Shown here: in pieces, positions 263 through 30,849 of the stretch
Layout of the letters: every line of letters begins with the position of its first letter
Numbering within the stretch: the stretch's first letter is position 1
Assembly (NCBI GenBank): GCA_002269645.1
Contig: NIVC01000758.1
Location: 248,001 to 312,000, forward strand
From: Macrostomum lignano
Taxonomy: Eukaryota
Direction of reading: 5' to 3'
Length of the DNA stretch: 64,000 bases
The notes under the pieces: model-generated
The model's input: the letters and a program-made list of their open reading frames with translations, nothing else
What the model was told of the DNA's origin: nothing
The model's database searches: none
Position numbers and translations under genes: made by a program

Positions 263-2568
263 GAGGACTCCCACTTACATGTTAAATGTATTAACAAACT
301 CAGTACTTATTGTATTAATCGAATTGGCTATGTCCTTATCTATTTTTAGCATGGTTATTATAAATCGTATTTTATCGCTTGCGACAGAGCTTGTGCTGTG
401 TAAATGTGTACTCTCTGTGCTGTGTACAATTCTGTGATTTTATTGAAGATATTATTTTAAAAGCAATTTTACTGATTTTCTATTTACTTATTTGCCAGAT
501 TTCCCTAATCGAATTTTTTTATATTGTTGTGCCATGACTGCGAGAAAAATCTGCTGGACAGCACAGACCAATTATTGGTTGTTATAACTATTGTACACTC
601 GCTTGTTGCTACTGCTTGCCCCTCCTGCTCAGTGAGTAGTGCAGTGCGCGCATTCACTTGACTTCTTCAATTTATGCAAAACTCTCAGCTTACCTACGCG
701 GTCTAAAGTCCCTGAGATTTGCTTTCAAAGACGCTTCTCTGACCTCTCAATTGCAGTGATGTAGCTTTTCGGGAAATTATCAGTTCGATTCGAGTAAACA
801 TTATTATCACTTTTGATATTGATATTACATTTAAATTCCTAATTCTAGAGATACCGGTATTTTTCATTGAATTCCGATATTTTCTACCCAAATTTGGTAT
901 TAAGCACCGACTTTTTATCAGTGTACAGTTGCAATGATTCTTGGCTTGGCTTGGTAGAACATGCTCTTCCAGGAGAAGCAAGAATGATGTTTGCAAAAGA
1001 TCTGAGCAGTCTTGAGTTTGAATTAATTATTTTGATGATATTATACTGAATTTTACTTTGCGATATCAAGTTTTTATTTTCATGCCTTTGGCTCGACTAT
1101 AAATCTCAGTTTGACTTGGGCGTTCTTGTTAACTATTATTCTGCTTGATACATTATTAACTCATGATGCAGGTAGCACAGGTGATGGCTCGAGACTTTGA
1201 GCCCTTGGGTGTCTGCTTGTCTGCGAAGAAAAACAACGGCATCAGGAAAACTGTAGCAATCCCCGCCTGTATTGCCCACCCATCGTATATAGACAGTGCT
1301 GCTCTCCGCTCAAAACTTATGGGGGAGTTGCTGAGATGCTAAGGGTCAACTGGGAGTTTTTGGTAGGCCTTAGATCAAAGGTAGGGTTAGGGCCATTGGC
1401 TTAAATGGAGGCTTTGATGCCAAAGCTCACAGGGGGTGCTGATGTCTGACTTAGGCTAGATAGCTAGATAGATAGCAGAGCCGCGATGCTTTTTGCTTTA
1501 AACATAATTTTCCAGACAACTGCATTTATCTCGACAACACTTGCTCCCGCGTCCGGGTGAAAATATTTGAATGTTGATGAATGTAATTGTCGAAACTCTG
1601 CAAAGAGCTAACGCAAAGTTGTTAACTGGTTATATTAGGGCGAATTTCAATTCACACACTACCATGCTTTTATGTATTATCATTGAAAACTAAAAACAAT
1701 TTTTTAATGTTGCTACATCATTCTTAACTGATTCTATCTTAATCATTGACCATGAAGTTCAACCATAGACAAAATCCATTCTGCACGCAGAATCTAAAAA
1801 GAATGCATTCACAGTGCATTTCTCTCATCTAGCCTAAGCCGGTTCGTGCAAAGTTCGGCCATAGACAATGATTTTAGCGAGACTGAGTTCAGCAGCTTTC
1901 ACGATCTCCTCAGTTTAGTCTATGGTCTGTGGGCTCTGCAGTTCCCATTCTGAGCGCCTTCCCTCGGCTTTTGTTCAGCAGCAGGCGAGCAGAGCAGCAA
2001 TAAACTCTGAGACAGAGAGAAGTTCTGTTTAACGAAGCACCAGACTGGGTAAGTTCGATTTCTGACTGATTCTGCTATGTCTAATATATGGAATCTTTGT
2101 TCGCAAAGCTATTCCAATTTGCATAGGGAACTCATAGGCACAGCATTGATAAAAGTAGAGCTAGAAGGCTTGACATACCGTTTAGATATTTTCTATTTAC
2201 AGATTTAAAGACCTCAGTCATCTTTACCGCCCGTCATTCTTTATTTTCACTTCTCCTTGTTTGAGCTGCACTTGGTTTTCAATTTGAACTCGCTCTATTT
2301 CCTTTTGCAACTGCTGCTTGTTTAGTAGTTGATTAGATAGAGCGTGCCATACTTATTAGAAATTATGGGTAGGCTGCCTGGGTTGAAACGCGATTGAAAC
2401 GCTCTACATTTGTCCGCCGTCACTGTCTATGGTTGAAGCATATTTCAATTATATTCAGTTCATCACTTATAGCCACTGTATATTTCACTGCCAACAAACA
2501 CAAGACCAAACACAACAGGAATGAAACACGAAGTAAACGAAATAATTCAGTAAATAACGCTTGGAAGC

Positions 2569-3120
2569 TCAAAATGATATGTGGCTGGAGAGTTCATCAA
2601 TAGTTACCTCAATTCGCACGTTCCTTGTCTCCAGCACGTACCGATGAATAGACGCCCTGAAGCACACCAGACTTCGGACAGTGTATGGCTTGCCTTCCTG
2701 AGTCCTCAGTGACACAAACCACAGCCGCATATAGGCACAAAGATAGCGGATCGGCATTGTTTCGATGTTGTCCGGCAGTTTCTGGTCCACCAAATATTTT
2801 TTGAAGCGCTTCACATGGAAGAGCGGTTTGATCCGTGGTCGATTTGCGTTTGGCAGCCTCTTCCTCAGAGGAAGCTGCTGTGCAGGAAGCTGCACAGCAG
2901 CTTCCTCTTCTTCCGTCAGTTCCCGCAGAAGCTCGGCATTATTCAGAATGCTTGGATTGGACAATTCTGCGTCAATCAACTCCTGCTGTCTCACGGTCAC
3001 ACCGGTCCACTGACTAACTTCTTCACCAGGATCACGATGTCCAAGTTGCTGTAGAAACTCAATCTCATTCATTTCTAAACCGCTAATATCTTCCTCTAGT
3101 ATTGATTCCCAGTGAAACAT
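2569..3120 (-). pseudogene. Crypton-type tyrosine recombinase copy YR1, N-terminal part only
   Basis: The 183-aa ORF aligns by eye with the N-terminal halves of YR2/YR3: W..I.EEDISGL...EIEFL, then LCAYMRLWFVSLRTQEGKPYTVRSLVCFRASIHRY vs LNQYLRYFYFKLKKQDGSFYSPASLICIRAGIQRF. Possible donor GAG|GTAACT at 2607. No catalytic C-terminal half found downstream. Confidence 0.75.
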
Positions 3121-3335
3121 GGCTAATTCCGAACCTTAAAGCTGTTTAAATCTTATTTTCTCTCCCACCCACCAAGAGAAGAATGCTTCAAACTCTATTT
3201 GGGTTTCAACCATAGACAGTCTCCGCGGACTGCGAAACCGCCACGAAGCATATAGCTAAAGCTTTTTCAACCATAGACAGTTTCTGTGGACGTGAAACCG
3301 CGTTGTGCGTCCGCGCTTCAGCCTACCCATAACAC

Positions 3336-3461
3336 TAATATAGACTGGCTGTTGAGGACTGAAATGAACTGAAACGCCGAGGCGCCGAACGCCGAAGCGC
3401 CGAAACGCCGAAGCGCCGAGGCTTTTCAGTTCATTTCAGTCCGAACAGCCAGTCTATATTA
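3336..3461. mobile_element. 126-bp palindromic MITE-like element
   Basis: Arms TAATATAGACTGGCTGTT(GA/C)GGACTGAAATGAACTGAAA at 3336-3374 and 3424-3461 surround a core of CGCCGA repeats. Confidence 0.7.
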
Positions 3462-3836
3462 ATATATTGTGTCTAGTTTTGTTTGGGCCACAAACGATTG
3501 CGTCGACGGAAATTGTGAACTAAGCAAATTTTTGCGCGCCTTTCAGGCATCGAAACAGGAATGCAACAGATTGCTTATCTGCGAATAGTCTATGGTCAAG
3601 CTGCCCCCCATCTTTGGATAGCTATTCCCAACGGGTTATATTTGGATATACCCATTTGCAAATGAGCAATCTGTATATTCTTGTATCAATGCGTTTGCGA
3701 GGATATTTTTTATTCAATACAACAAAGCAGAATAAACAGATTGCATAAATATACGAAAACGGTAACGTGGGCATAATGAAACGTGGACCAATTGTTCCGC
3801 AATAATCGATGAGTAGAGCGAGAATCGACAGTTCAT

Positions 3837-5928
3837 TCAGTCCTTCCGATGAATGGTAAATGTGCAGTTGGTGAACGTGCAGGTAGAAAACTGAAATCCA
3901 GCAGGACCCGACTTCACTGCACCAACAAACGTGGAACCGCTGCTTTGAACTTGCGACTGACGCTGCTCCACGAGGCGAGACTCGGGCTGAATAGGCTGAA
4001 CAGCATTCACTGGACTCTGCATGGCCTGACGCTGCTCCACGAGGCGAGACTCGGGCTGAATAGGCTGAACAGCATTCACTGGACTCTGCATGGCCTGACG
4101 CTGCTCCACGAGGCGAGACTCGGGCTGATTAGGCTGAGCAGCATTCACTGGACTCTGCATGGCCTGAGGCTGCTCCACGAGGCGAGACTCGGGCTGAATA
4201 GGCTGAACAGCATTCACTGGACTCTGCATGGCCTGACGCTGCTCCACGAGGCGAGACTCGGGCTGAATAGGCTGAGCAGCATTCACTGGACTCTGCATGG
4301 CCTGACGCTGCTCCACGAGGCGAGACTCGGGCTGAATAGGCTGAGCAGCATTCACTGGACTCTGCATGGCCTGACGCTGCTCCACGGGGCGAGACTCGGG
4401 CTGAATAGGCTGAACAGCATTCACTGGACTCTGCATGGCCTGACGCTGCTCCACGAGGCGAGACTCGGGCTGAATAGGCTGAACAGCATTCACTGGACTC
4501 TGCATGGCCTGACGCTGCTCCACGAGGCGAGACTCGGGCTGAATAGGCTGAACAGCATTCACTGGACTCTGCATGGCCTGACGCTGCTCCACGAGGCGAG
4601 ACTCGGGCTGAATAGGCTGAGCAGCATTCATCGCACACTGCACAGCCATTGACGCACGATACAAACTTGCATCTCTTTGAACCCTTAGGTGGCCACGCAC
4701 ACTCTTCTCAGACTTGTGTCCAGTCACGGCCATGATCTCGTTGACATTGTAGCCCAATGCATGTAGATCACAAACGCGTGACACCCTGAAAAAGTATGGA
4801 AATATTAAGCAATAAGTTCAGTAACAGAAGACCGCATGAATATAATATTATTAACAACATCGTGGAAAAATATCGGATCATTACCTGACACAGTGGTTAG
4901 TGTACTGCCCATGCAAGCCAGCCTTCGCACTCAAACTCTTCATAAAGTTATTCCAATAATTCTTGCCACGATTCACCAACGCTGAGAACCCCTGTCCCTT
5001 CAGTGGCTTCGGAAAGAGACTGTCATCCTTGGTTGTCGTTGGAATACGGCCCAAATACCGCTGCAGAACTGCAACATCGTACAGACGAACTTGCTTCATG
5101 TCAGAGGTGGCACCACGCTTCAGCGGAAATCGACCACGATTCTTGGATGGCAAATGAGGTAAATAGGCATATTCACGTCCCTCACTGTCATGCGCAAAGA
5201 GAATTCCATCTCTCTTCATTAGATGCTCAACATGTTCTTGACCACGTTCGCCGAAGGTGTACATGAGAGTGAAAAAAACCTCATCTTGAAGGCGTTCATC
5301 ACTTGAGTAGTTGCCGCCAGTTCCACTGAAATAGCATTTCATTTTCTCCATGTCTCTTGGCTCAATCGGATTATAGTGCTTGACGTCTCCACCAGCCTCG
5401 ACAAACTCCTTCGCCTTCATCTCCAACATTCGATTCGAACTCTTGAAGCAGTCGTCGGATTTCAGATCCACTTTTCTCTTCACAACAAATTCAAAATACC
5501 TCTGGATCCCCGCTCTGATGCACACAAGGGAAGCCGGAGAATATTTGCCTCCTTGCTTGGTCTCCAGCGTAAAGTAGAAAAATCTCAAATACTCGTTCAG
5601 CATTGTCAACTCCATGGTAACCAGATCGGCCGTGCTGCTCTTGTTTCAAACAAACCCCACAAAGCGGCCTCCATGCTCGTACGGCCGAATTGCATGGTTG
5701 GTTCCGCATGGGATCCTCGGGGCAAGCCTCTTCTTCGCTTGGCAGTGGTGGCAGAGCATCATCGTTACCACATTCAATGAATCGGATGAACTCCATCAAC
5801 TCTTCGTCATTCGCCTCGTCACATCCACCCATACTCAAGTCGCTGAGAAAGTTGACCTCATTTCCATTCAAGCCGTCAATGCTTTCAATCGGCAAATTCG
5901 ACCAATTTATCATTCGTATGAGTGGCAT
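3837..5928 (-). pseudogene. Crypton-type (DUF3504-like) tyrosine recombinase copy YR2, two exons (5928-4885, 4785-3837), disrupted
   Basis: Motifs FGERGQE, SKN, TNHCVR, TGHKSE. Phase-2 intron 4884-4786 (AG|GTAA ... TTTTCAG|G) restores NHCVR-VSRV. Frameshift near 5680-5700 and in-frame TGA at 5648-5646. The expected catalytic Tyr is His (SVRGHL). C-terminus FSTCTFTNCTF matches YR3 FHNCSFNGCKF. Confidence 0.85.
3957..4630. repeat. 69-bp coding VNTR, about 10 copies, in last exon of YR2
   Basis: Unit encodes AMQSPVNAVQPIQPESRLVEQRQ (23 aa). Spacing 3962 to 4031 is 69 bp. Confidence 0.95.
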
Positions 5929-6219
5929 GAGTAGAGGTTAGGGAAAACAGAAGAAACAGGAACATGTTATCCTCTGCCGCAGAGTTCCAGCTTATAAGAC
6001 CACAACTTCATTTAACATGTTTCGTCTATGGTAATTTCAGACTGTTCCGCTAAACTTTTCGTTCCAAACGTTTAGTCTATGGCCATCATTTGGCTTGCGC
6101 CAAGTGGAAAATGCCTATGACACAAATCCCTAGAATCGCTTAGTGAAGAATTTCCGTCTGGGAAGTTGTGTCATAGCCGTTTTGAATTGGTTTTTGGACG
6201 AAACTAGACACAATTCCAC

Positions 6220-6317
6220 TATCAAGAGGTCAAGCTTCACACACAACTGCGTTACCGCGTCTCGGCCTACCGGCCTCAACGCTATGGCAGTTGTGTGTGA
6301 AGCTTGACCTCTTGATA
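6220..6317. mobile_element. 98-bp hairpin/mini-MITE with perfect 31-bp arms
   Basis: TATCAAGAGGTCAAGCTTCACACACAACTGC (6220-6250) is the exact reverse complement of 6287-6317. TA at both outer ends. Confidence 0.75.
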
Positions 6318-6331
6318 ATCATACATTGCTA

Positions 6332-7682
6332 CGAGGTGTATCCCAAAAGTAAGTTTCGGTCAGCTGCCAACAGTGAGCAATTAGTTTTAAAAAGCGGAAA
6401 CTTTGTCAAACCACAACTTCAAGTACAATATTTGTCACTCCACAAATCGGCCGCTAAGCTCAACGCACTTTTCCCAGCGACGCACCCACGCTTCGAAGGC
6501 TGGCCTGCAGCCGGCGATCGCCAGATGTCGGAGAGCTGATGAAGCGCTGTTGTTCACCTGCTCCTCAGATCCGAAACGCTGGCCACGAAGGCTCTCTTTC
6601 ATCTTCGGGAACAGATAAAAGTCTGCCGGAGCCAAATCAGGCGAGTAGCGCGGGTGGCGGAGAATTTCCCAGTTCCACGAGCCCAGCAGCTCTTCAACCC
6701 GTCTGGCCCGATGCACCGGGGCGTTGTCGTGATGGAAGATGACGCCTCTCTCCAGAAGGCCCGGCCGTTTTTTCCTTATCGCTGGTCGCAGTTTCTCTTG
6801 AAGCACCCATCGATAGTACTCAGCATTCACTTTGGTACCCACAGGCACAGGCCAGTCCAGAATGATCCCGTCAATGTCAAAAAAATGATGTGCATCACCT
6901 TCAATGAGCCTTGCTTGCGTCGCACCTTCTCGGGACTCGCCGATCTTATCGGAAGCCACTGCGCTGACTGCCGCTTCAGCTCTGGGTCCCATTCGTAGAC
7001 CCACGTCTCGTCTCCAGTCACTATTCTACCGAGAAATTCGTCGCCTTCACGACGAACCCGACGGAGGCAGTCCCGGGACACCAGCACCCGCTCCTCCATC
7101 TGCTCGTCAGTCAGCAGGTGTGGCACCCATTTGGCGAAAAGCTTTTGTAGGCCTAAATTCTCGGTCAGAATGCGGTGCACAGTGCTGTGGGGAATGCCGA
7201 GGAGTTCCTCCAGCTCACTGCATGTCCTTCTGTTGTCTTCACTCACAGAAGCCATCACGCGATCAGCATTGGAATCCGTTGTCGCAGTCCTTGGTCGTCC
7301 AGAACGCTCTTTGTCCTCCATGCAGTCCCGTCCTTCTTGAATTTCTCGCACCCATTTCCTGACCGTTTCAATGAATGGTGCAGCTTCTCCTAGGACTCTC
7401 GCGAGTTCTTGATGAATCTCTGGTGTCGATTTTCCAGACAGCACAGAAAACTTGATGATGCTTCGAACGTCATAGCGAGAGAACGAGCTGGACGCGGCCA
7501 TTGTTGCAAAGGGTTGTGTGCTTGGGTTGCAGCCATGCAGCTCGAGAACAAGCTAGGACTTAGCGACTTGTTTAGGGTTGGGCCATAGACAAAAAAGAAA
7601 GCAACAACGTACGTGGAAGTTAGCTGAGCCTCTTGGGTGCCGAGTTACATATGAGGGAAACTTACTTTTGGGATACACCTCG
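6332..7682 (-). mobile_element. Full-length mariner (DD34D) transposon, 1351 bp, transposase split by one frameshift
   Basis: 26-bp perfect TIRs CGAGGTGTATCCCAAAAGTAAGTTTC with TA TSD. ORFs 7501-6827 and 7004-6435 carry WVPHLL, TGDETWV, HHDNAP and YSPDLAPADF, with 34 residues between the last two Asp. Frame changes at a T7 run (+ strand A7, 6879-6885). Confidence 0.97.
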
Positions 7683-8149
7683 TACTATGGTGAAATTGGT
7701 GTCATTGCTTATGAATAGTTTTATTCAAAGATTTAAGTCAGGTTCATGATTTTCAAAATCATGTCCAAAATCGAGGGTATCCGTAAACTGCATGGTGTAC
7801 TGCTCCTGAGCTGAGGTGAAGAATATAAAATTAATATATATTATTTCGTCAATTTTCACTACTTAGTGCTGAAGTTCTAATAGCATGTGCACATTTGTTA
7901 CAATTAATAAATAAGCAGATAAAGAAGTTAGCGTCAAAAGGAGCAAATCAAGCATAATTACAGTAAAGAAAAAAATTGGCCAGTGGCAGGTTGCCAATTA
8001 GCTCGTAAATGCGGCATTCTTCTCGAATCGTTCGTTAAACTAATTTTTCAATGTTTTTTTGCACTCTCTTCACCCGAGAAGCTGATTTTAGCATTGTTTG
8101 GACATCCCCCAAGCTTTTAAAACAGTAAAATTAACAACTTTTTCCGTTT

Positions 8150-9800: not shown

Positions 9801-9809
9801 GTATGCTTA

Positions 9810-10957: not shown

Positions 10958-10989
10958 GCAAGGCAATAACCCCCGAAATCAATATGCCA

Positions 10990-13900
10990 CACAGCTATCT
11001 TGAGGACCAGTTAAGTGACAAAAAAATTGCCCAAAAAACGGTTTGTGTTTTCAAAAACAATGCACCACTAGAAGTTTTTATATAAATTTTCAAAATGATT
11101 TTGCGAGATATTTTTATTTTATTGCATGTTTTGACTTTTACAAGGAGTTCCAAGCTAAGAATATCTGTGACCCACTAATAATTCAGAACACAATGTATCT
11201 TTTTAGCAGAACAACTTTTAAAATGTGATGTAAGAGATGTGTAGCAGCTCCTAGCCCTCATTGTGTTTTTAAAATTGCATAACTTTATAAAGGCTAGATG
11301 CCTATATACAAGCGTACATTTACACTAAAATCAGTTGAGACATCAACTCATACTGCTGAGTACAAGCTTATAGTTATGTACAAGTTGTGTAAGCCTAAAA
11401 TTGTAACCTCATTTGGTAGTGGAATGAACAAGCTATAATATCAATGCCGCATGAAAGTGTCATCTTAAGCAATCAAAACTGGAAAATTAACTCAACCTGA
11501 TATAGTATTTAGCTGCAACCATGCCAAACCCATCATGCGGAGCATCACATGCAGAAAATCGGCTCAAAGTATGTCTCATTTGCATGCAAAAAGGAAACAG
11601 CATGAAGCCAATTGGTGAAACTGTACTCACAAGGATTCGCCGGTTTTTTATGCCAAGCTGTAATCTTGATGATGAGCAACTACCAGCTGCAGTGTGCACT
11701 CGATGCAGAACTCTGCTGGCTGACATTGAGGCAGGAAAGCGAGAAGAAGATGCTTTGCCTCGACCATTCGACTTTTCAAGCATAAAAATGACTGTCCTAA
11801 CACGCTCAACGACCATGTGCGAGTGTGGCATCTGCACTGCCGCAAGATGGACACCTATTGGTAAAGGCCTTGGATCACGGAAAGTCAGTGCACACCCTCG
11901 TGGGAGACCTTCATCTGGCATCGAAGATCCTCTGCCTGAAGCTCAACCTGTATCAACCTGCATGCGCTGCTACTCTGTGCTTGGCAAAGGTATATCTCAC
12001 AATTGCAATGTGACTCAAAGAAGAAAAAACCTTTCACTTCAGTTTGCCATGGACAAAAGAGGTGCAGAAATCCATGCATCAGACCTCATAAAGACAAAGT
12101 GCACCAGTGGTGCCTTTCTCTCCACGCAGTTAGCAACTCGTGGACCTTATCAGCTGACAGTGACAACTACAGCGCAATGCAAAAACTCTTGTGCCACATT
12201 TGTTGACAAGCCTGTGACTGCCAAAAAGTTCAACAGGTTTCAGAATACTCTTGGCTTAAGTGGCCAGCAGACTAAACTGGCAGCTCAGTTCCTGCGCAAC
12301 TGGAAAGGACGTAAGTCTGTGGACTCTGGACTGATGTCAAAGTTACGTCAGCTGGATGAGGAGCTAGGTGAGTTCTTTGATGTAAAGGCAATGCAGCTGG
12401 AGGTTGGGAAGGATGCAGCAACAGAGATAAGACACGTTGTATACTGCAAGGACCCGGAGGGACTCATTGATAGCCTTCTGTACCACCGCTGCATTGAAGA
12501 AGGAAACTTTGAAGTTAAAATTGGCATAGATGGAGGAGGCAACTTCTTGAAGGTCTGTCTCACTATTGTGCGAATTGGAGCAGAGCAACAACCTAAAACA
12601 AAGACCAGCTATTCTGCTGCCGCATGCAGTTCTCGTTTCTGTGATAGTGGAGTGAAAAAACTGCTGATCCTTGCAATTGTCGAAGATGTTCGAGAGTCCT
12701 ACTTCAACATCAAGGCTGTCCTGGACCTTCTGAGACTGCAACAGGTACGCTTCAGTCTTGCGGTTGACATGAAGATGGCTAACGCACTACTTGGCCTCCA
12801 GTGTGCCAGCAGCAGTCACCCCTGTCCATGGTGCGAGTTGAACTGCAAAGAATTCTGTAGCATACATCATGAAGTTCCCTTGCGGTCATTTGGCAGCATA
12901 CGACAGAACGCTAACAGCTACCAAGAGCTGGTGCAGCAGACAAGTAGCACAAGGCACTCGGCTGCCAGGTTCAAGAATTGTGTTAGAATGCCGCTGCTTG
13001 ATTTTCCAGACGAGACTTTGGTGATCAACGTTGTGCCTCCAATGGAGTTGCACTTGATGCTAGGTATTGTCAATCGGCTGTTCAAGGAGCTTGATTCTCG
13101 ATTACAGTCAATCTCCAACTGTACAATACGAGCACAGGACTTTGCTAATCGTTTAAACATCTGGCAGGCACCATATCAAGGTGGGCAGTTTACTGGCAAC
13201 CACTGCAGCAAGCTGCTAAACAGTGTCGACTCACTTGAGCAAATGCTGCAAGACTGCGGTGCCATAGCAGCCATGCCTATTGTACAAGCCCTTCGCACCT
13301 TTCGTGAAGTCTGTAGGACTTGTTTTGGACTGGTGCTTCTAGACGGCTACGATGCAGCAATAAAGGCATTTGCTGCGGCCTACAAGGATGTTGGCATTCC
13401 TGTCAGCCCTAAAGTCCATGCTGTCTTTGAGCATGTTGCTCCATTTCTTCGCAACCAGCCGCAAATGCCTGGATCAGCTCTGCATGGCCTTGGATTCTGG
13501 TCGGAGCAGGCAAGTGAGGCTGTGCATGCGGACTTCAGTCGCCTCTGGGACAGCAGCTACAAAGTGGCGAAAACGAGTGCACAGTACAGCAAGCAGCTGC
13601 TGAAATGCACTATTGTGTACAACTCACGGCACCAGTGAACAAGTTGCTTTTAGTTAATAACTATTTTTAAAGGTAAAGGTGATTTTCTATCAAAATGTTA
13701 TTGAAAGTCTAATATTATTCAACATTTTTCATTTAATGAAGTTTACTAATTTATGTATTGATATGTTTGATCAAAAATTATATGTATGCCATACATTATA
13801 CAAGTAACCCTCAACTACCAGACCACAGATACTATAATTTCAGCACAGAAATCATTGTAAAAGTCAAAACATGCAATAAAATAAAAATATCTCGCAAAAT

Positions 13901-17590: not shown

Positions 17591-17599
17591 CCAGCCAGA

Positions 17600-18869: not shown

Positions 18870-20030
18870 CATCACAGGGCGCGCCTCCGGGCCAGGTCCC
18901 GAATGAACGCCGAATCCGGGGCGCCGACGTCAGCCAGCAGGTAGTCGACGAAACGCCGAGTGCGCGCCTGCCCCCGCCGGTAGGGTGCCTGCAGCGTTAG
19001 CAGCAGCACCTCCGGCACCGGCTTTGGGCAGTACGACTTAGCGCGGATGATGTGGCCTGCCAGCTGGAGTCGCCGACGGCGCAACAGGTCGCTTGGACGG
19101 ACCAGGCCGGCGCGGTGATACAAAGCCGCGTTGGTCACTCACTCGTAGCCGATCTTGAAGGCGGCGCGCAGCAGGCCAGAGTGCGCCGCGTCAACTTGTT
19201 GCTCGAGCGACTCCGTCAACGTCCAGGTCTCGGCGTTGTACTGCAAGACGGTCTCGATCACTGCCTAGAACAACGCCGCCCTCTGGCGATCAGGTAAGGC
19301 CTCGGACTGTAGGACTGCCCTCACAGAACGAAAGGCAGCCCAGGCAAGCCCGCGGCGACGCCGCAAATCCTCGCGGACGCCGGGAACCAGACTGCAGAGG
19401 TAGATGAACTGCTGACAACGCGGGAGCTACCTCGCCTATTCATCATCGCTTCGACACAAAATCGCAGCCTCGATGTCATCCGGCACGCAGAGCACAACTG
19501 TCTTCTGCGTGTTGACCACCAGGCCGACACTCGCCGCAACAGCAACTAGCTTGTCCAGTTGTCTCTGGGTGCCTTCGACAGTTGAGGACAGCAGGGCGAG
19601 ATCGTCGGCGTAGCCAAGCACGCTGAGCCGCCGTCAAGCCCCAGAACGAAAAGGAACGGCACAAGCGTATCTCTCTAAAGCACCCTTGAGGATGTCTCAA
19701 AGAAGTCCAATAGGCAGTCCGGTGTTGAAACAGCAGCAGCTTTCGTATCACTGTATATTGCCATGATGGTGGAAATCAGCTGCTCTGGCACGTTGTACGC
19801 ACGGAGCACCTTTGGGAGCACAGACCTGACGACCGAGTCGAATGCCTTCTTGAAATCTATGAAGATAACAATCAGGATCGACTCGCGTATCTGTGCTCCC
19901 TCGATGACTCGCCGAAGAGCTAGGATCAGCGTCACTGTGCCGCGATGAGGCCGGAAGCCGATCTGTTCAGGACGCAGGTACAGATCCAGCACCGGCTGCA
20001 ACCGCGATAACAGCATCCGGTTGCTGAACA
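18870..20030 (-). mobile_element. 5'-truncated non-LTR retrotransposon (RTE-like) RT remnant
   Basis: LRPEQIGFRPHRG, IFIDFKKAFDSV, LGYADDLALL, VVNTQKT, and C-terminal RRRRLQLAGHI. Frameshifted. Confidence 0.88.
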
Positions 20031-20519: not shown

Positions 20520-21656
20520 CTTGTCTCCGGAGCTAAAGCAGAGTGAAAGCAGAGCTCTAAAAACCAGGAGGAAAATTGCTAGAGCAATTACAGACTGTAC
20601 GAGTCGAGCATAAATGCACCTCCTTTCTCTCTACTGGCAGTGGGGATTTGCTGAGATAACGAGGCTGCCGGGACTCCCGCCTCTCTTTGATTGGCGACAG
20701 AGAAAAGGAGGGATCGAGGCAAATTGCTGGCCTGAAATGGCACCTGAGCGCACAGAAAAGCTCCAGTTATCTGGTGATGGTTGGGCCGAATGCATGCTGG
20801 CTTAAGATTCACCTGCGACTGCGAAAGCTCGAGCCCACATTTCTAGAATTTACTCAAGGGCTTCCTTATCCATGTATCCTGATTAAGCCCCCTCCCCAAG
20901 TCTCCCGATGAGCAGCTGCTAAAATATGAGCAAAACACATGCAACTTTATCTTGCAACGCAACGAATGCAATGAATTCCCAATGCTAGTTGATTCAACTC
21001 GCTCAATGGGGCGAAACAGTCATTGTCATTAATTTATCATGCGGACAGAAGACTTCCCTGCTTTAGACGCTGCAGTCAGCCAGAAGTTTCTGAAACCGAC
21101 CATCTTCCCAGCTAAATACACTCTCAGCAACATGTTGGTCTGCTGCATATAGTTACACTTGCTTTTTTGCTCTATAGCTTTTTCTTCTATGAGTGTACTG
21201 TATTGATTTTGGCAGCAGATAAAGAGAGCTGCGACAATAAAGAGAAAAGAAAAAGGAAGAAAAATGTCTACCCAGACCAGCTAGAAAGAGAGCCGAGTCT
21301 TTAAGTTCCATTTTGGTACTTAACGAGAGGTTCAACAATGGCGACGAGGCCACCAACTGTGGACCCACTAGAAGACGGTGAAGACCCAAACCGATAGATC
21401 CAGCGTTTTGAGATCAGCGCTAAACTCAATGGCTGGACGGACGACGCCTTCCTGGCACTTGTAGGCAAGTAAATCTTCAATCTCCTTGCTGACACAACAC
21501 CGGGTGAATTATGATACTGCCACATTAACACTGGCGAGATGGGTGAGATTGTTTAGTATGTTGTAGAGTTCAACAATGGCCAAAACATGAGTGCGCGTGG
21601 CGCATGAGTGTCTATGGCTATTGTTTACCGATGCAACATACTACTCAAGCGCATTA

Positions 21657-22795
21657 CGAGGTGTATCCCAAAAGTAAGTTTCGGTCAGCTGCCAACAGTG
21701 AGCAATTAGTTTTAAAAAGCGTAAACTTTGTCAAACCACAACTTCAAGTACAATATTTGTCACTCCACAAATCGGCCGCCAAGCTCAACGCACTTTTCCC
21801 AGCGACGCACCCACGCTTCGAAGGCTGGCCTGCAGCCGGCGATCGCCAGATGTCGGAGAGCTGATGAAGCGCTGTTGTTCACCTGCTCCTCAGATCCGAA
21901 ACGCTGGCCACGAAGGCTCTCTTTCATCTTCGGGAACAGATAAAAGTCTGCCGGAGCCAAATCAGGCGAGTAGCGCGGGTGGCGGAGAATTTCCCAGTTC
22001 CACGAGCCCAGCAGCTCTTCAACCCGTCTGGCCCGATGCACCGGGGCGTTGTCGTGATGGAAGATGACGCCTCTCTCCAGAAGGCCCGGCCGTTTTTTCC
22101 TTATCGCTGGTCGCAGTTTCTCTTGAAGCACCCATCGATAGTACTCAGCATTCACTTTGGTACCCACAGGCACAGGCCAGTCCAGAATGATCCCGTCAAT
22201 GTCAAAAAAATGATGTGCATCACCTTCAATGAGCCTTGCTTGCGTCGCACCTTCTCGGGACTCGCCGATCTTATCGGAAGCCACTGCGCTGACTGCCGCT
22301 TCAGCTCTGGGTCCCATTCGTAGACCCACGTCTCGTCTCCAGTCACTATTCTACCGAGAAATTCGTCGCCTTCACGACGAACCCGACGGAGGCAGTCCCG
22401 GGACACCAGCACCCGCTCCTCCATCTGCTCGTCAGTCAGCAGGTGTGCCACCCATTTGGCGAAAAGCTTTTGTAGGCCTAAATTCTCGGTCAGAATGCGG
22501 TGCACGAGTTCTCACGAGTTCTTGATGAATCTCTGGTGTCGATTTTCCAGACAGCACAGAAAACTTGATGATGCTTCGAACGTCATAGCGAGAGAACGAG
22601 CTGGACGCGGCCATCGTTGCAAAGGGTTGTGTGTTTGGGTTGCAGCCATGCAGCTCGAGAACAAACTAGGACTTAGCGACTTGTTTAGGGTTGGGCCATA
22701 GACAAAAAAGAAAGCAACAACGTACATGGCACTTAGCTGAGCCTCTTGGGTGCCGAGTTACATATGAGGGAAACTTACTTTTGGGATACACCTCG
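21657..22795 (-). mobile_element. Second copy of the same mariner family, 1139 bp, internal deletion
   Basis: Identical TIRs and TA TSD, near-identical to 6332-7682. It is 212 bp shorter, with the junction near 22505-22520 carrying a short GAGTTCTCAC duplication. Same T7 frameshift. Confidence 0.97.
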
Positions 22796-23144
22796 TAATT
22801 GTCGCAATGCTTTGACTGAGACTGAGACTGAGCTCGTTTTTACTGACTGGTGAATAAATGGTGCTTCTGTTATTATCTATCATTAAATAATAAATATTTA
22901 ATACTGCTAGTGGTCCTTGTATGTATCCCCCTTTTGCCCCGGGCGAGTGTCTATGTGACGCATGTTTTCATTTATTTCCCTAGGTGAATAAATCATTTAT
23001 TTCCCGCTGCCCCGCGGGCTGATAAATTCGAGACAACAACCATAGACTAACAAAAACTAGCAAAAAAGTGTAGCACACAAAAGCTTAATTACAACTGTAG
23101 GACACAAAATGTGTGATATAAAGTTCGTTTCGGACTTATAATGA

Positions 23145-23450
23145 CTAACAGAATGTGATTTTCACAACGTTTTTTTCACCGTCTGCCTCGATGAGCATGC
23201 GCTTACTAGCAGGTGGTTCGATAGAAACCTCGGTATTGACGTCGGACACGGTAACACGAGACTGTTGTATGATACTTGCAGCAGAAGCCTCGGTGGCGTC
23301 TCCACTCAAAATAGCACTTTGGATCTTCTGTCGTGTTGTTGATGGCGCTATGTATTTCTCCAGAGCCTTGGTAGTAGCGTGACCAGTGATCCGAGCAATG
23401 TCTCCGCGTTCGACACCAGCCTTGAAGAAGAAGAACACCAGCATGTCTGT
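23145..23450 (-). pseudogene. Crypton-type tyrosine recombinase copy YR4, terminal exon only
   Basis: FKAGVERGDIARITGHATTKALEKY retains the GH and catalytic Tyr motifs. Preceded by a CCCACAG acceptor. No upstream exon found. Confidence 0.7.
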
Positions 23451-26487: not shown

Positions 26488-27019
26488 AAAACAGACAATG
26501 GAAACAAAAGTTATAAACTAAAATGTAGCAGGACCTCGACCATAGACTTACAGTAAGTCAACAAGTTAACAAAAATCCGAAGTGGTAGCTCACAAACGGG
26601 TAACTGGCTGTAGTGAATGCTCCAAAATGACTACGGTGAATGACTGCGATAGACCCATGAGCCGATGAAAGTTGAGCATGAATCTCGGCTCAACTGTGCC
26701 CCGCCCCCAAAGGGTGTATAACACACTCCTCTGAGCAACACTTGAATGCACATCCCTGACTTTTAGCGCAGCAGAAGGAGGGAACAAAAAGCAATAAAGC
26801 TGAAGCCCAGTTTGAAATATTCTGTTGCTTTAAAAGCTATATGCTTCTCCAAGTTTTTCCATAGATATCTCTTTGTCACAGCAGCCTAACAAAGAAGTCT
26901 GAGTTCATTCAATCAAAAGTACTTTCGCTACTTTCCGCTAGCTTGTCGAATTAATGTGAGTCTATGGTAGAGGTCCTGCTACATTTTAGTTCATAACTTT
27001 TGTTTCCATTGTCTGTTTT
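26488..27019. mobile_element. 532-bp non-coding segment bounded by 61-bp inverted repeats ending internally in CCATAGACT
   Basis: Arms 26488-26548 and 26959-27019 have 2 mismatches. No ORF inside. Confidence 0.75.
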
Positions 27020-27281: not shown

Positions 27282-28738
27282 TTACTCAAATTTGCAACCA
27301 TTGAATGAACAGTTGTGGAAACTGTACCTGACCGACGGATTGTCATGACTGATGCCGGTGATCTGCACGGAAGACGACACAGGTACTGGCACCGGTGAAC
27401 TCTCACGCAATGGAGTCGCAACAGCTTGTGAAGAACCATTCAAATCAAGTGCCATAGAAACAGCCTCACTGGTAGACTGCAGCGAGCGATCACGGCGCTT
27501 GGACAGGTAACGGCGAGTTGTCCTCTCAGAAACCTGACCGGTTATCGACATGATGTCAGCCAGGTTGTACCCAGCAGCCTCTAGATCAGCAATCCTGCTC
27601 ACTCTACAACAGAAATAAAGTATTGCATAGAAAATATGCAACTGGTTTAAAGCAATATGAAGAAAAAGGCTTACCGAATGCAATGATTCGTGTACATCTT
27701 GGACAAACCGGCCTTCTCGCTCAAGTTTCGCATGAAACGCAGGAAGTAGTTCTCCCCGCGATTCTGCTTTGTTGAGAACATAGGCTGTCCATTGGAATCC
27801 GTGTTGGATAGTGGACGCGGGAACAGATGGTTGTCCTTGGTTGTTGGAGGTAGCAGTTGTAGATATCTCCTCACTTTGGCCGTGTCGTAGATCCGAGCTT
27901 GTTTGTTGTCCGGCCTGGCCTTCGCCTTCACAGGATCGGCTGACTTATTCTTCGTTGGCAGAGCAGGAAGACAGTAGTACTCCTTGCCGTCAGAATCCGT
28001 GTGCAATTCAAGCGAGTCCCTTTGTCTCAGGAACTTCAGATGCTCCTGGCCACGCTCTCCAAAGGAGTAAAGAACATAGAACAGAAATTTAGCCTGCTCG
28101 ATTTCAGCCGTAGTCCCTTCAAAGTAGCACCGCAACTTCTGCATGTCGCCTTCTTCAATTGGTTCATACTGCCTGGTGCAGCCACCATCTCGATGGAAAT
28201 CACGAACCTTGACACGCAGCATCTCGTTGCAGGAATTGAATTCCTCACCACCGATTATATCGACAGGCAGCTTCAGAACCATGCGTAGGAAACGCTGAAT
28301 TCCAGCCCGGATACAGATGAGAGAGGCCGGCGAGTAGAACGAGCCATCCTGTTTCTTCAGCTTGAAGTAGAAGTACCGAAGATATTGGTTCAATGTAGGA
28401 TTGTTGACATGCTGAATGTTGCGCAGATTCTCCCCTTCCAGGAAGTCTCGAAAACGTTGGCCATGCTGGTACATCTGCTTCCGAGTATCCTCAGGCAGAC
28501 TCTCGATCTCGATTCTGTCCATCTCGGAAACGTCTATCTTTTCATCTCCATCGATCATTGGCAGCCCAGTATCAGCTGGACCATTTTGGACATACTTCAG
28601 GAACGCATCGAAATCTTCGTCGTGCCGATCAACGGCAGAGGATTCCGAGAGGAAGTTCAGTTCATCCTGCGTGATGTTGCCGAGGTCCTCACACGGGAGG
28701 TTACCCCAATTAATATAATGTATTATCGGGTCGCTCAT
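27282..28738 (-). CDS. Crypton-type (DUF3504-like) tyrosine recombinase copy YR3, open frame, 461 aa, two exons (28738-27675, 27603-27282)
   Basis: Joined length is 1386 nt. Phase-2 intron 27674-27604 (CG|GTAA...TTGTAG|A) sits at the same position as in YR2. Motifs FGERGQE, TKN, LFPRPL, YTNHCIR-VSRI, ITGQVSERTTRRY. AATAAA about 125 nt after the stop. Confidence 0.9.
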
Positions 28739-29138
28739 GATGGACAGAAAACTCTTGAATCAACAGGTTTGGACAGACTACTTACTGCCTGGGAATCCCT
28801 CACACAAACCCCTTCACCCCCACTGAAAGTTTTGCCATAGACATTTCAACCCTCTATTCAATCAATAGGATTGTCATTGCCATGAACTCTCCACGCCTTT
28901 TGGCTTTCGTGCCATAGACGTTTGTGCCTCCTCCTTCTGGGCCACTTCGATTCGTGCCATAGATATTTCCTGCAATGAAGTTAACTGGAAGAGAGAACGG
29001 CTAGCGCCGCTCGTGGCTTTGGCCGTTGCCTGGAGTTCTCTCTTCCAGTTAACCCCCCATTGTCTGAAGCGAAAATCGAGCGAGATAAAAATAGCTGGCT
29101 CAGATTAGCACTCCATTCTTTTCTTTCCTCCATGGTTA

Positions 29139-30400
29139 CACTCAGCAACATTGAAAAGTTTCCACCCTAGCGCGCGAAGGGTCAACGTTTTGGTGGGAGA
29201 TATTCGTGGTTTGAGCCATAGACAAATATATAATCCGGATTCGAACGAAGCAAAGGAACAGCATAGAAACAAAGTACGCGAGCATGGGTGACAACTTGCC
29301 CAGAACAGGGTCAGTAACGCGTATATCAGCCACGTGCGTGCAGCAGAGCGCTCACTCTCCGGGGCATCCCCAGAACCAGGCGTCGCAGAAAATCTTGCGG
29401 TAGTTGTTGCCATGCAGTAGACAGTGATTCGCGCAGTTGGGCAACGTTTTGCGGCGGATTGTCGCGCCGAATCGAGCGCTTCAGGTAATCCCAAACGTGC
29501 TCTATGGGATTCATGTGCGGTGATCGGGACGGCCAGCGCAAGGATCGCAGGTGCAGCAGCTCCTTCAGATGCGCCACAGCAGCTGCGCGATGTGGTGGGG
29601 CGTTGTCGTCTTGGAGGACGCTGTTCCCCACGCCACCACATGAAGCATCAATGAAGGGCAGCAGGCGCGTCTGTAGAGGTTGGCGTACGACTCGGCAGTC
29701 ACAGTCGCATCCAGGAACACGAGCTCCGTCTTCGCGTGCATTGTGATGCCTGCCCACGCGTGAATAGAAGCTGACTGGCTCTCAGAGTTTTGCACGTGCT
29801 GCGGCAGCATCTCCTGGCGCGGCTGGCGCCACACGCAAAAGCGGCCGTCGGCCCGGAACAATCGAAAGCGGCTCTCATCTGTGAAAATCACTCGCCGCCA
29901 CTGCTGCTGCCTCCAGTGGACCCTTTGCATGCCCATTGTTCCCGGCTGGCCACAAGGGTTGGGGTCAGACGTGGCCGTTTGCGCATCTTACGGGATCGCA
30001 GCCCCGACTCCCGCAATCGTCATCGGATTGTTTGGGCGCTCAGGATATCCCCTCGCCTGCTTCTTTCAGCCCACATCAGCCGTAGAAGAGTGGCTGGCAA
30101 TGCGGGGCTTCCCTTCACCATTCGCAGCAATCGCCGGTCCGCCCTCCTAGTTGTACTGCGCATATTGAGCCGCCAGCCGCGCGTGGCGTGCGCAACGCTG
30201 CCCGTTTCTCCGCAATTGATTTGCAGTTTGCGGATTGCTGTGTGCGACCGCCCAATTTGGCGAGCAACAGCTCGGATGGACATCCCAGCCTCCAGCATGC
30301 CAATGGCGCGCGCTCGTTCCAGATCGGTCATTTGGCGAACCATTGCGTTCGGTTGCGAACGTGGATTTTAGACTCCTGTAAGCTGCTGCTGTCTGCTCCA
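29139..30400 (-). mobile_element. Tc1-like (DD34E) transposon, transposase disrupted, only one TIR recognised
   Basis: HTH N-terminus (30343-30020), IFTDESRF, QDDNAPPH and WPSRSPHMNPIEHVW lie in three frames. TA-CACTCAGCAACATTGAAAAG terminus at 29137-29158. No matching 5' TIR found. Confidence 0.9.
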
Positions 30401-30849
30401 TGTGACTGTTTCCTTCGACCTGTCTGGCGTCGATGACCCAAGTTTTTGTCTATGGCGCAAGTGCGTGTTGACCATGGATAAAGGAATAGAAAGGATCGCA
30501 CATCTAAAAGCGCGTCTATGGCCAAGACTCCCTAAAAATTGGGATATTCCCCCCCATGAATTTTATTGGCTGCTGGAATTTAATACTCGTAATAGTCCCC
30601 CCCCCCTAAGTTCTTACTGGCTGAAGCTTGTACACAGGGGAAATTCCAAAGTCCCGGATTAACGCGCATAGGAAAAGAATGCACTATTTTAAAGACATAC
30701 AAGTAATATTGCCTGAAATTACATTTGCGCACTTTTGCGTGGTAAACAAATTTTGCCTCTTGATAGCTCGTAGAACAGCAGTTAGTTTGTATTTTTGACG
30801 CCAATGCTTTTATGTCGAAAAAGCTTCTGGTATGCTCAACATCCTTCCC

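What the first reader, a model, noticed from the sequence alone, without database searches (positions are those of the whole stretch)
1763..30521. Recurrent octamer CCATAGAC/GTCTATGG marks the tyrosine-recombinase loci and transposase 5' regions
Seen: 20 exact copies counted by eye. CCATAGAC is at 1763, 1859, 3210, 3271, 7583, 22696, 23040, 26540, 28835, 28912 and 29216. GTCTATGG is at 1918, 2425, 3588, 6024, 6075, 21610, 26960, 30448 and 30514. About 2 are expected by chance in 64 kb, and I saw none in the 33-kb host-gene half. Copies often come in pairs 50-100 bp apart and sit 80-220 bp upstream of the ATG of YR1, YR2, YR3, the Tc1 and both mariners. Others lie 3' of YR genes or at the inner ends of inverted repeats. 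Established, from memory and to be verified: Cryptons are YR-only elements, and TATGG termini were described for one Crypton group. Inference, two competing models. (a) The octamer is the YR binding/crossover site, making this an array of excisable or invertible units, integron-like in an animal. (b) It is a host transcription-factor site convergently used as a promoter by unrelated DNA transposons. Either would be notable.
Basis: partly seen in the sequence, partly recalled or inferred. Interest (0 to 1): 0.82.

Follow-up and report, generated by a model that had tools for sequence, protein, structure and literature searches.

The report
Shared promoter motif of flatworm transposons
A sharply defined DNA word (CCATAGAC) sits about 90-110 bases upstream of the start codon of three unrelated kinds of jumping gene in Macrostomum flatworms and stays exact while its surroundings mutate, so it is most likely a docking site for a host protein that switches these genes on, not a cut-and-paste site for the recombinases.

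Summary
There are 20 exact copies at the listed coordinates against 1.4 expected. One-mismatch variants are not enriched. All copies lie in the transposon-rich left half; the 24.7 kb of non-satellite DNA on the right has none.

The window is Macrostomum-like flatworm DNA. In five window genes (three Crypton-type tyrosine recombinases, a mariner, a Tc1) the nearest octamer starts 89-112 bp upstream of the ATG, in either orientation. Four of the five have a second copy 51-77 bp further up.

The octamer is not an element boundary. It lies about 95 bp inside the mariner inverted repeat. In YR3, homology with a relative continues upstream past every octamer to a palindrome.

Diverged relatives from elsewhere keep the exact octamer at the same place while the flanks have diverged. 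These include an M. lignano genome contig, where it is the only copy in 14.4 kb. A related mariner from the mollusc Elysia lacks it.

Best reading: a binding site of about 14 bp for an unidentified host factor, acquired independently by unrelated DNA transposons. The known parallel is heat-shock elements in M. lignano LTR retrotransposons. Interest is moderate.

The parts
1763..1770 (+). octamer CCATAGAC, first of a cluster of three (1763, 1859, 1918) in a degraded region left of YR1 with no intact ORF nearby
1859..1866 (+). octamer, second of the orphan cluster
1918..1925 (-). octamer, third of the orphan cluster, in the opposite orientation
2412..2437 (-). 26-bp unit containing octamer 2425; an inverted copy of the YR1 promoter units, at the truncated 3' end of the YR1 fragment
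   Evidence: (inverted repeats I4 and I5, 85-88% complementary)
2569..3120 (-). YR1: N-terminal fragment (183 aa) of a Crypton-type recombinase gene, truncated
3205..3291 (+). YR1 promoter region: two 26-bp units with octamers at 3210 and 3271, 90 and 151 bp upstream of ATG 3120; they read GTCTATGG in gene sense
3325..3472 (.). 148-bp palindrome upstream of the YR1 octamer pair; candidate recombinase core or terminal structure
   Evidence: (-53.3 kcal/mol, z = -13.6)
3588..3595 (-). octamer 242 bp 3' of the YR2 stop and beyond its AATAAA, 116 bp outside the YR1 palindrome
3837..5928 (-). YR2: Crypton-type recombinase gene, read as three overlapping ORFs in different frames (3837-4784, 4881-5615, 5491-5928), so it needs a splice or frameshift to read through; the C-terminal tail holds a 69-bp in-frame tandem repeat
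6024..6082 (-). YR2 promoter region: octamers at 6024 and 6075, 96 and 147 bp upstream of ATG 5928; they read CCATAGAC in gene sense
6220..6317 (.). palindrome (38-bp arms) upstream of the YR2 octamer pair
   Evidence: (-45 kcal/mol, z = -13.4)
6330..7684 (-). mariner copy 1, bounded by 28-bp TIRs TACGAGGTGTATCCCAAAAGTAAGTTTC; transposase ATG at 7501, one frameshift
7583..7590 (+). octamer inside mariner 1, 82 bp upstream of the ATG and about 95 bp in from the 5' end; none at the 3' end
21610..21617 (-). octamer 45 bp outside the left end of mariner 2; inverted with respect to 23040
21655..22797 (-). mariner copy 2, 98-99% identical to copy 1 in the two aligned 288-300-nt blocks, with a 212-bp internal deletion
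22696..22703 (+). octamer inside mariner 2, the same site as 7583
23040..23047 (+). octamer about 100 bp 3' of the stop of a fourth recombinase C-terminal fragment (ORF 23145-23444, minus strand)
26488..27019 (.). 532-bp element with 88-bp terminal inverted repeats, each carrying an octamer (26540, 26960) 52 bp from the outer end; lies 3' of YR3
27282..28738 (-). YR3: apparently intact Crypton-type recombinase gene, two exons with a 71-nt intron at about 27603-27673, 461 aa
28835..28964 (+). YR3 promoter region: octamers at 28835 and 28912 (97 and 174 bp upstream of ATG 28738) plus a one-mismatch copy at 28957, as three diverged units of about 37 bp
28980..29053 (.). palindrome (perfect 19-bp arms) upstream of the YR3 octamers; the arm TTAACTGGAAG is conserved in relative L001
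   Evidence: (z = -6.9)
29216..29223 (+). octamer 3' of the Tc1 ORF, inverted with respect to 30448 (16-nt inverted match); probably within a degenerate long Tc1 terminal repeat
   Evidence: (I1, I3)
29326..30343 (-). Tc1-like transposase gene, decayed by several stops and frameshifts; ATG at 30343
30448..30521 (-). Tc1 promoter region: octamers at 30448 and 30514, about 105 and 171 bp upstream of the ATG; they read CCATAGAC in gene sense

Best explanation
The octamer is the invariant core of an asymmetric site of about 14 bp, T-n-n-R-CCATAGAC-D-n-W. The site is recognised by a sequence-specific DNA-binding protein of the host, a Macrostomum-type flatworm. Unrelated DNA transposons have each acquired one to three copies just upstream of their coding sequence and kept them under selection. 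These transposons are Crypton-type tyrosine-recombinase elements, a mariner family and a Tc1 family. The site acts as a promoter-proximal element that recruits the host factor to drive, or time, transcription of the transposase or recombinase gene.

Shown by sequence:
- the motif's sharpness and its enrichment;
- its fixed distance to the ATG;
- its independence of orientation;
- its position inside the elements rather than at their ends;
- its exact conservation across diverged lineages and species while flanks diverge;
- its absence from a related mariner in a mollusc.

Inferred, not shown: that a protein binds the site, that the protein is host-encoded, that it activates rather than represses, and where transcription starts.
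For: (1) Sharpness: 20 exact copies against 1.4 expected, while one-mismatch variants sit at background. The flanks are constrained to R at -1 and not-C at +1 in 27 of 27 sites, T at -4 in 19 of 27, and A/T at +3 in 26 of 27.

(2) Position: the proximal copy starts 89-112 bp upstream of the ATG in 8 promoters. These are YR1 -97, YR2 -103, YR3 -104, window mariner -89, window Tc1 -112, L001 -101, L008 -96 and L009 -89. The chance of an exact octamer starting in a given 24-nt band is about 7e-4 per promoter.

(3) Orientation is fixed within a family but differs between families: GTCTATGG in gene sense for YR1, YR3 and mariner, CCATAGAC for YR2 and Tc1. This points to DNA-level recognition, not an RNA signal.

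(4) The site is internal. The mariner TIRs are at 6330 and 7684, and the octamer is about 95 bp inside the 5' end only, with none at the 3' end.

(5) Phylogenetic footprints.
- Mariners at 54% and 75% protein identity keep TGTCTATGGC between a conserved TIR and the ATG, with everything else diverged. One is on M. lignano contig NIVC01002911.1; the other comes from unrelated sequencing runs.
- A YR3 relative at 71% identity keeps two copies at -101 and -191, although the flanks no longer align by BLAST.
- A Tc1 relative at 70% identity keeps the distal copy at the aligned position.

(6) Site turnover: aligned positions swap exact and one-mismatch copies between relatives, while the number of exact copies is kept.

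(7) Specificity. In M. lignano locus L008 the only octamer in 14.4 kb is the one in the mariner promoter. The Elysia mariner has none between its TIR and ATG. The 24.7 kb of non-satellite right-half DNA, which holds a CSN5-like and a GPCR-like gene, has none.

(8) Precedent in the same organism: heat-shock elements were independently acquired by three LTR-retrotransposon clades and shown by transgenesis to be needed for activation (PMC12801592).
Against: - No transcription start sites, chromatin, binding or expression data could be consulted, so 'promoter' rests on position relative to the ATG.
- No consistent TATA-like box or second motif lies downstream of the octamer.
- No host gene carrying the motif was seen, so a host regulon is not demonstrated. 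The factor could be encoded by a transposon.
- I could recall no known transcription-factor consensus that matches, and no motif database was available. The papers checked do not mention the motif.
- Several copies are not upstream of any recognisable gene: 1763-1925, 21610 and 26540/26960.
- Copies also lie 3' of recombinase genes (3588, 23040, L003 position 1678). A pure promoter model explains these only as neighbours' promoters, remnants or enhancers.
- Other transposons in the window lack the octamer: the 705-aa TIR element, the THAP/P-like gene and the RT element.
- The species of the Logan runs is not known.
Confidence: 0.68

Rival explanations
1. Recombinase site. The octamers are binding sites for the Crypton recombinase itself. 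They could be crossover sites or termini. Alternatively they could be accessory 'arm-type' sites flanking a palindromic core, as in the attP of phage lambda. On this view the YR loci are excisable or invertible units.
For: - Every YR gene has two or three octamers between a strong palindrome and the ATG.
- Octamers also occur 3' of YR genes: YR2 at 3588 in direct orientation with 6024/6075, the fourth YR fragment at 23040, L003 at positions 36 and 1678 in direct orientation, and YR3 at 26540.
- The truncated YR1 fragment is bracketed by inverted 26-bp units that contain the octamer.
- GTCTATGG contains TATGG, the terminal repeat of most CryptonS elements (PMC3212892).
Against: - The same exact octamer is conserved at the same distance from the ATG inside mariners and Tc1 elements. 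These encode no recombinase, have their own defined ends, and carry the site at the 5' side only.
- Homology between YR3 and L001 extends beyond all octamers.
- The octamer is not palindromic and has no inverted partner at a short fixed spacing.
- Orientation relative to the 3' copies is inconsistent: 26960 is inverted, 26540 is direct.
- Animal Cryptons were reported to have no terminal repeats.
- The palindromes are better candidates for the core sites.
Confidence: 0.1
2. Host defence or chromatin site. The octamer is bound by a host factor that marks transposons rather than activating them. Examples would be a repressor, an insulator, or a factor that licenses small-RNA precursor transcription from transposon-rich clusters, by analogy with the upstream Ruby motif of C. 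elegans piRNA genes (from memory).
For: - All copies lie in the transposon-rich half, in both orientations, at about 1 per 1.4 kb of non-satellite DNA.
- Several copies are not next to intact genes.
- No host gene with the motif was seen.
Against: - A site that harms the element should be lost. Instead it stays exact in lineages whose flanks have diverged beyond alignment, and lost copies are replaced nearby.
- The tight spacing to the ATG of the element's own gene is what a promoter element would show.
- There is no evidence on small RNAs.
Confidence: 0.12
3. Artefact of shared ancestry or chance. The copies would be remnants of one repeat family, or of a module exchanged between elements, and not independently maintained sites.
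For: Three groups of copies do share longer flanks: 7583 = 22696, 26540/26960, and 2425/3210/3271.
Against: - About 17 contexts are unrelated beyond roughly 14 bp.
- Enrichment is about 15-fold over shuffles.
- Independent loci from other genomes show the same site.
- One-mismatch variants are not enriched, as decaying repeat copies would be.
Confidence: 0.02

Closest known systems
Heat-shock elements independently acquired by LTR retrotransposons of Macrostomum lignano (Mag, CsRN1 and Gmr1/Osvaldo clades; PMC12801592), and ONSEN in Arabidopsis
   Same: Same host genus. Unrelated transposon lineages each carry one to four copies of the same short host-factor site in their promoter.
   Different: - There the motif is the canonical, universally known HSE with a known factor (HSF) and a known stimulus, and function was shown experimentally. 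Here the motif matches no consensus I could recall and the factor and condition are unknown.
- The carriers here are DNA transposons (Crypton, mariner, Tc1), not LTR elements.
- The site here keeps a narrow distance, 89-112 bp, from the ATG.
Terminal TATGG direct repeats of CryptonS elements (oomycetes and a diatom; Kojima and Jurka 2011, PMC3212892)
   Same: The octamer GTCTATGG contains TATGG. It occurs on both sides of several YR genes, sometimes as direct repeats.
   Different: - CryptonS is a stramenopile group with a different protein architecture.
- The same paper found no terminal repeats in animal Cryptons.
- Here the octamers are internal to the element, since homology runs past them.
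- They come in two or three copies at a fixed distance from the ATG.
- They are equally conserved in mariner and Tc1 elements.
Arm-type sites of lambda-integrase-family attP regions (from general knowledge)
   Same: Several copies of a short asymmetric site, in both orientations, lie tens to about 150 bp from a palindromic candidate core next to a tyrosine recombinase gene.
   Different: Arm sites are specific to their own integrase and element. This site is shared with DDE-transposase elements that have no recombinase. No binding data exist.
Position-constrained, orientation-independent proximal promoter boxes such as the NF-Y CCAAT box (from general knowledge)
   Same: A short exact core, in either orientation, within a narrow window upstream of the gene and often duplicated.
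   Different: The sequence is different (CCATAGAC, not CCAAT). It was not seen at the two host genes in the window. So far it appears only at transposon genes.

Membership tests
Convergently acquired host-factor site in transposon promoters | Short, sharply defined motif significantly over-represented | tested here: met
   20 copies against 1.4 expected; one-mismatch variants at background
Convergently acquired host-factor site in transposon promoters | Constrained position upstream of the element's own gene, in either orientation | tested here: met
   The proximal copy starts 89-112 bp upstream of the ATG in 8 promoters, and both orientations occur
Convergently acquired host-factor site in transposon promoters | Conserved in diverged lineages of the same element while flanks diverge | tested here: met
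   Mariners at 54-75% identity, YR at 71%, Tc1 at 70%
Convergently acquired host-factor site in transposon promoters | Present in unrelated superfamilies with unrelated flanks | tested here: met
   Crypton-type YR, mariner and Tc1; flanks unrelated beyond about 14 bp
Convergently acquired host-factor site in transposon promoters | Host-specific: absent from related elements in other hosts | tested here: inconclusive
   The Elysia mariner lacks it. YR relatives at 36% GC and two Tc1 relatives from ENA metagenome assemblies lack it, but their organisms are unknown. That leaves a single named control.
Convergently acquired host-factor site in transposon promoters | Bound by a factor and required for transcription; lies upstream of the start site | not testable with these tools
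   No start-site, ATAC, ChIP or reporter data were accessible. The supplements of PMC5730564 held as text contain no promoter sequences.
Crypton (tyrosine-recombinase-only DNA transposon) | Encodes a tyrosine recombinase with the catalytic R-H-R-Y residues | tested here: met
   Spliced YR3 (461 aa) has invariant R229, H352 in NHCIR and Y387; the second His is Q (TGQ). The Pfam Phage_integrase hit is sub-threshold (E = 0.0011), and relative P0010 has DUF3504 plus Phage_integrase above threshold.
Crypton (tyrosine-recombinase-only DNA transposon) | No reverse transcriptase or other transposition gene inside the element | tested here: inconclusive
   No RT lies next to YR1-3, but the element ends are not defined. 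The fourth YR fragment (23145-23444) lies upstream of an RT/RNase H region and could belong to a DIRS-like element.
Crypton (tyrosine-recombinase-only DNA transposon) | [quoted passage not shown] | tested here: not met
   Homology between YR3 and L001 runs past all the octamers to a palindrome. Animal Cryptons are reported to lack terminal repeats. The true ends could not be mapped from single copies.
Tyrosine-recombinase core recombination site | Two inverted binding arms of about 11-13 bp around a 6-8 bp spacer | tested here: not met
   The octamer and its 14-bp context are asymmetric, with no inverted partner at short fixed spacing. The palindromes at 3325-3472, 6220-6317 and 28980-29053 fit better.
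Integron-like cassette array | Recombination sites delimit cassettes that are captured or excised by one integrase | tested here: not met
   The sites lie inside autonomous mariner and Tc1 elements and upstream of each gene's ATG. There is no cassette structure.

The most novel reading that the evidence does not exclude
The octamer is the recognition site of a lineage-specific factor, possibly itself derived from a transposon. This factor would act as a common switch for many DNA-transposon families in Macrostomum, for example in the germline or in neoblasts. A whole 'transposon regulon' would then be co-regulated through one 14-bp word. A variant reading is that the site licenses small-RNA precursor transcription from transposon clusters, as the Ruby motif does in nematodes.
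Probability: 0.2. Interest if true: 0.8.

Novelty: new member of a known kind. Interest (0 to 1): 0.55.

Why it matters
If the octamer is a real factor-binding site, it shows that Cryptons, mariners and Tc1 elements in one animal lineage have independently tuned their promoters to the same host protein. Promoters of DNA transposons, and of Cryptons in particular, are poorly known. The result would give an entry point to when and where these elements are expressed in a regenerating flatworm with totipotent stem cells. It would also provide a compact, portable cis-element for transgene design in M. lignano. The idea is directly testable, because M. lignano has transgenesis, 5'-end RNA data and single-nucleus ATAC data. 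The finding also corrects a tempting misreading, that the sites are recombinase sites, and points to the upstream palindromes as the better candidates for Crypton recombination sites, which remain undefined in animals.

Tried and rejected
- Exact look-up of the window's 705-aa ORF in public assemblies found nothing, so the source genome could not be retrieved.
- P0005, an M. lignano UniRef recombinase, has no contig on record.
- A literature search for the octamer returned only primers and unrelated sequences. Two Macrostomum papers on start sites and motif vocabularies do not mention it.
- The supplements of the transgenesis paper held as text contain no promoter sequences, so host promoters could not be screened.
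- I looked for a TATA-like box or a second shared motif downstream of the octamer and found none that was consistent.
- I looked for long Tc1 terminal repeats that would explain the inverted octamers at 29216 and 30448. Only short, degenerate matches turned up, so this stays tentative.
- I considered an RNA-level role, since GTCTATGG contains an ATG that would start a short upstream ORF in mariner. I rejected it because YR2 and Tc1 carry the site in the opposite orientation.
- I compared the site from memory with common factor consensus sequences (YY1, RFX X-box, SMAD, SRF, bHLH E-box, posterior Hox, NF-Y). None fits the invariant positions. No motif database was available.
- A collection-wide scan for octamer pairs was not run. 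By my own rough estimate, a 16-base pattern with a variable gap would give thousands of chance hits in the metagenome collection.

Full report
**1. The observation**

Dinucleotide-preserving shuffles give 1.37 ± 1.12 (maximum 5). The motif is unusually sharp: allowing one mismatch adds only 36 sites, which is the chance level (56 in total against 41 expected).

The flanks of the 20 copies are mostly unrelated. The exceptions are 7583 = 22696 (two copies of one mariner), 26540/26960 (two arms of one inverted repeat) and 2425/3210/3271 (a 26-bp unit). That leaves about 17 independent contexts. By that measure the octamer ranks second of all 8-mers in the window, behind only AAGAAAAA.

The base before the octamer is A or G and the base after it is never C, in all copies. 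Pooling 27 window and external sites gives T(-4)-n-n-R-CCATAGAC-D-n-W, an asymmetric site of about 14 bp.

The right half of the window is largely minisatellite arrays with only a CSN5-like gene and a GPCR-like ORF. After masking tandem arrays it still holds 24.7 kb with no copy, against 28.0 kb with 20 copies on the left. That gives p about 2e-5 for 17 independent copies.

**2. What the region is**

The left half is a transposon graveyard on the minus strand:
- Three Crypton-type tyrosine-recombinase genes. YR1 (2569-3120) is only an N-terminal fragment. YR2 spans 3837-5928. YR3 spans 27282-28738.
- Two copies of a mariner. In the two aligned blocks of 288-300 nt they are 98-99% identical.
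- A decayed Tc1.
- A THAP/P-element-like gene.
- An RT/RNase H region.
- A 705-aa ORF inside 175-bp inverted repeats.

Spliced across a 71-nt intron, YR3 is a 461-aa protein with invariant R229, H352 (in NHCIR) and Y387. Its Pfam Phage_integrase hit is below threshold, while relative P0010 carries DUF3504 plus Phage_integrase above threshold.

The nearest named relatives of YR3 and of the mariner are proteins of the flatworm Macrostomum lignano, at 48-54% identity. Closer relatives, at 70-75%, come from unidentified sequencing runs. The window is therefore Macrostomum-like DNA, probably not M. lignano itself. That last step is my inference.

**3. Position relative to genes and element ends**

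In gene-sense coordinates the proximal octamer starts at these distances from the ATG:

| Gene | Proximal copy | Second copy |
|---|---|---|
| YR1 | -97 | -158 |
| YR2 | -103 | -154 |
| YR3 | -104 | -181 |
| mariner | -89 | none |
| Tc1 | -112 | -178 |

Orientation is constant within a family but differs between families. It reads GTCTATGG in sense for YR1, YR3 and mariner, and CCATAGAC for YR2 and Tc1. This argues for recognition of double-stranded DNA rather than an RNA signal.

Aligning the two mariner copies defines their 28-bp terminal repeats at 6330/7684 and 21655/22797. The octamer therefore lies inside the element, about 95 bp in from the 5' end. There is no copy, even with one mismatch, at the 3' end.

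For YR3, alignment with relative L001 shows homology continuing upstream of all octamers, as far as a palindrome whose arm TTAACTGGAAG is shared. So here too the octamers are internal.

**4. Independent loci**

*Crypton-type recombinases.*
- L001 encodes a YR 71% identical to YR3, with the same intron position. It has two GTCTATGG copies at -101 and -191, in the same orientation as YR3, although only the coding region still aligns by BLAST.
- In the alignment, exact and one-mismatch copies swap places between the two loci, which indicates site turnover with the number of copies maintained.
- L003 (45% identity, a third run) has one copy 34 bp upstream of its ATG and another 121 bp after its stop.

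*Mariners.*
- On M. lignano contig NIVC01002911.1 (L008; transposase 54% identical) the only octamer in 14.4 kb lies 96 bp upstream of the mariner ATG.
- In L009 and L010 (75% identical) it lies 89 bp upstream.
- A multiple alignment of the three 5' regions shows a conserved TIR, then diverged sequence, then an exact island TGTCTATGGC, then diverged sequence again up to the ATG.

*Tc1.*
- L012 (70% identical) has two CCATAGAC copies. After correcting its start codon, the one at -165 aligns with the window's distal site.
- The window's proximal site aligns with a one-mismatch copy in L012.

*Controls.*
- A related mariner in the mollusc Elysia marginata has no octamer between its TIR and ATG. 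The single copy in that 21.5-kb locus lies outside the element, with 0.66 expected by chance.
- YR relatives from a 36%-GC organism, and two Tc1 relatives from ENA metagenome assemblies, also lack it. Their hosts are unknown.

**5. Interpretation**

The evidence has six parts:
- a sharp asymmetric motif;
- a fixed distance to the ATG;
- occurrence in either orientation;
- a location inside the elements;
- exact conservation amid diverged flanks, with turnover of individual sites;
- presence in three unrelated superfamilies and at least two species, and absence from a mollusc relative.

Together these form the signature of a protein-binding site under selection for the benefit of the elements. 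I read it as a promoter-proximal site for a host factor. The mariner carries it only on the 5' side, which argues against a transposition cofactor; such a factor would be expected at both ends.

A direct precedent exists in the same animal. LTR retrotransposons of three clades independently acquired heat-shock elements, and mutating those elements abolishes activation in transgenic worms (PMC12801592).

Four things are not shown:
- that a protein binds the site;
- that the protein is host-encoded;
- that it activates transcription;
- where transcription starts.

No consistent TATA-like box follows the site. No host gene with the motif was seen. The motif is absent from the literature I could search.

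**6. The recombinase model**

The recalled 'TATGG termini' are real but belong to CryptonS of oomycetes and a diatom. The same paper reports no terminal repeats in animal Cryptons (PMC3212892).

Some features keep a weaker version of the model alive:
- Octamers also occur 3' of YR genes (3588, 23040, L003 position 1678), sometimes in direct orientation with the 5' copies.
- The truncated YR1 fragment is bracketed by inverted 26-bp units that contain the octamer.
- Each YR gene has a strong palindrome just upstream of its octamers, at 3325-3472, 6220-6317 and 28980-29053. Their folding z-scores are -13.6, -13.4 and -6.9.

That layout resembles a core site with accessory arm sites. However, conservation of the same word at the same place in mariner and Tc1 elements cannot be explained by a Crypton recombinase. 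The palindromes, not the octamers, have the form expected of recombinase core sites. I give this rival about 0.1. I give a defence, chromatin or small-RNA licensing role about 0.12, and artefact about 0.02.

**7. Verdict**

The integron-like reading is not supported. The convergent promoter-site reading is supported by comparative sequence evidence but not by functional data.

This is a new example of a known kind of phenomenon, transposons adopting a host factor's site. The motif is undescribed and the carriers (DNA transposons, including Cryptons) are unusual. It is of moderate interest, and directly testable in M. lignano.

Noticed in passing
window 3325-3472, 6220-6317, 28980-29053; L001 17-45: Each Crypton-type YR gene has a strong palindrome 200-390 bp upstream of its ATG, just outside the octamer pair (z = -13.6, -13.4, -6.9). 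The YR3 arm TTAACTGGAAG recurs in relative L001 as a short palindrome with arms of about 10-11 bp, which on its own is not significant (z = -0.6). These are candidate recombinase core sites or element termini for animal Cryptons, whose ends are undefined in the literature.
   Followed up: partly
window 2412-2437 against 3205-3230 and 3266-3291: The truncated YR1 N-terminal fragment is bracketed by inverted copies of a 26-bp unit (TTCAACCATAGACAGTnnCCGCGGAC). This could be the scar of an inversion or other rearrangement at the promoter unit. It is unexplained.
   Followed up: partly
window 3957-4630 and 31448-31899: There are in-frame tandem repeats inside coding regions. One is a 69-bp unit x 9.8 (98% identical) in the C-terminal tail of YR2. 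The other is a 39-bp unit x 11.6 in the THAP/P-element-like gene.
   Followed up: no
window 10990-14008: An element with 175-bp terminal inverted repeats (94% complementary) encloses an intact 705-aa ORF (11521-13638). The ORF has no Pfam family apart from a weak zf-AD hit and no exact match in public assemblies. It is an unclassified DNA transposon and carries no octamer.
   Followed up: partly
window 23145-23444 (minus strand): This is a fourth tyrosine-recombinase C-terminal fragment (…ARITGHATTKALEKYI…), called by eye with no Pfam hit. It lies upstream of an RT/RNase H region (16795-20016), so it may belong to a DIRS-like retroelement rather than a Crypton. Mariner copy 2 is inserted between them.
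   Followed up: partly
window 26488-27019: A 532-bp non-autonomous element has 88-bp terminal inverted repeats, each with an octamer 52 bp from the end. It also has internal one-mismatch copies at 26647 and 26859. No clear target-site duplication was seen.
   Followed up: partly
window 6330-7684 and 21655-22797: The two mariner copies are 98-99% identical in the two aligned 288-300-nt blocks. Copy 2 has a 212-bp internal deletion that removes part of the N-terminal domain. This suggests recent activity of the family.
   Followed up: partly
alignment A3 (YR3, P0003-P0006): The Macrostomum-type YR clade has TGQ where more distant relatives (P0009-P0011) have the usual TGH before the catalytic tyrosine, so one of the conserved histidines is replaced.
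   Followed up: no
window 33000-64000: The 'host' half is dominated by more than ten different minisatellite arrays with periods of 10-66 bp, some over 1.5 kb long. The ORF of the CSN5/JAB1-like gene (43358-44332) runs at its 3' end into a 53-bp tandem array (44141-44516).
   Followed up: no
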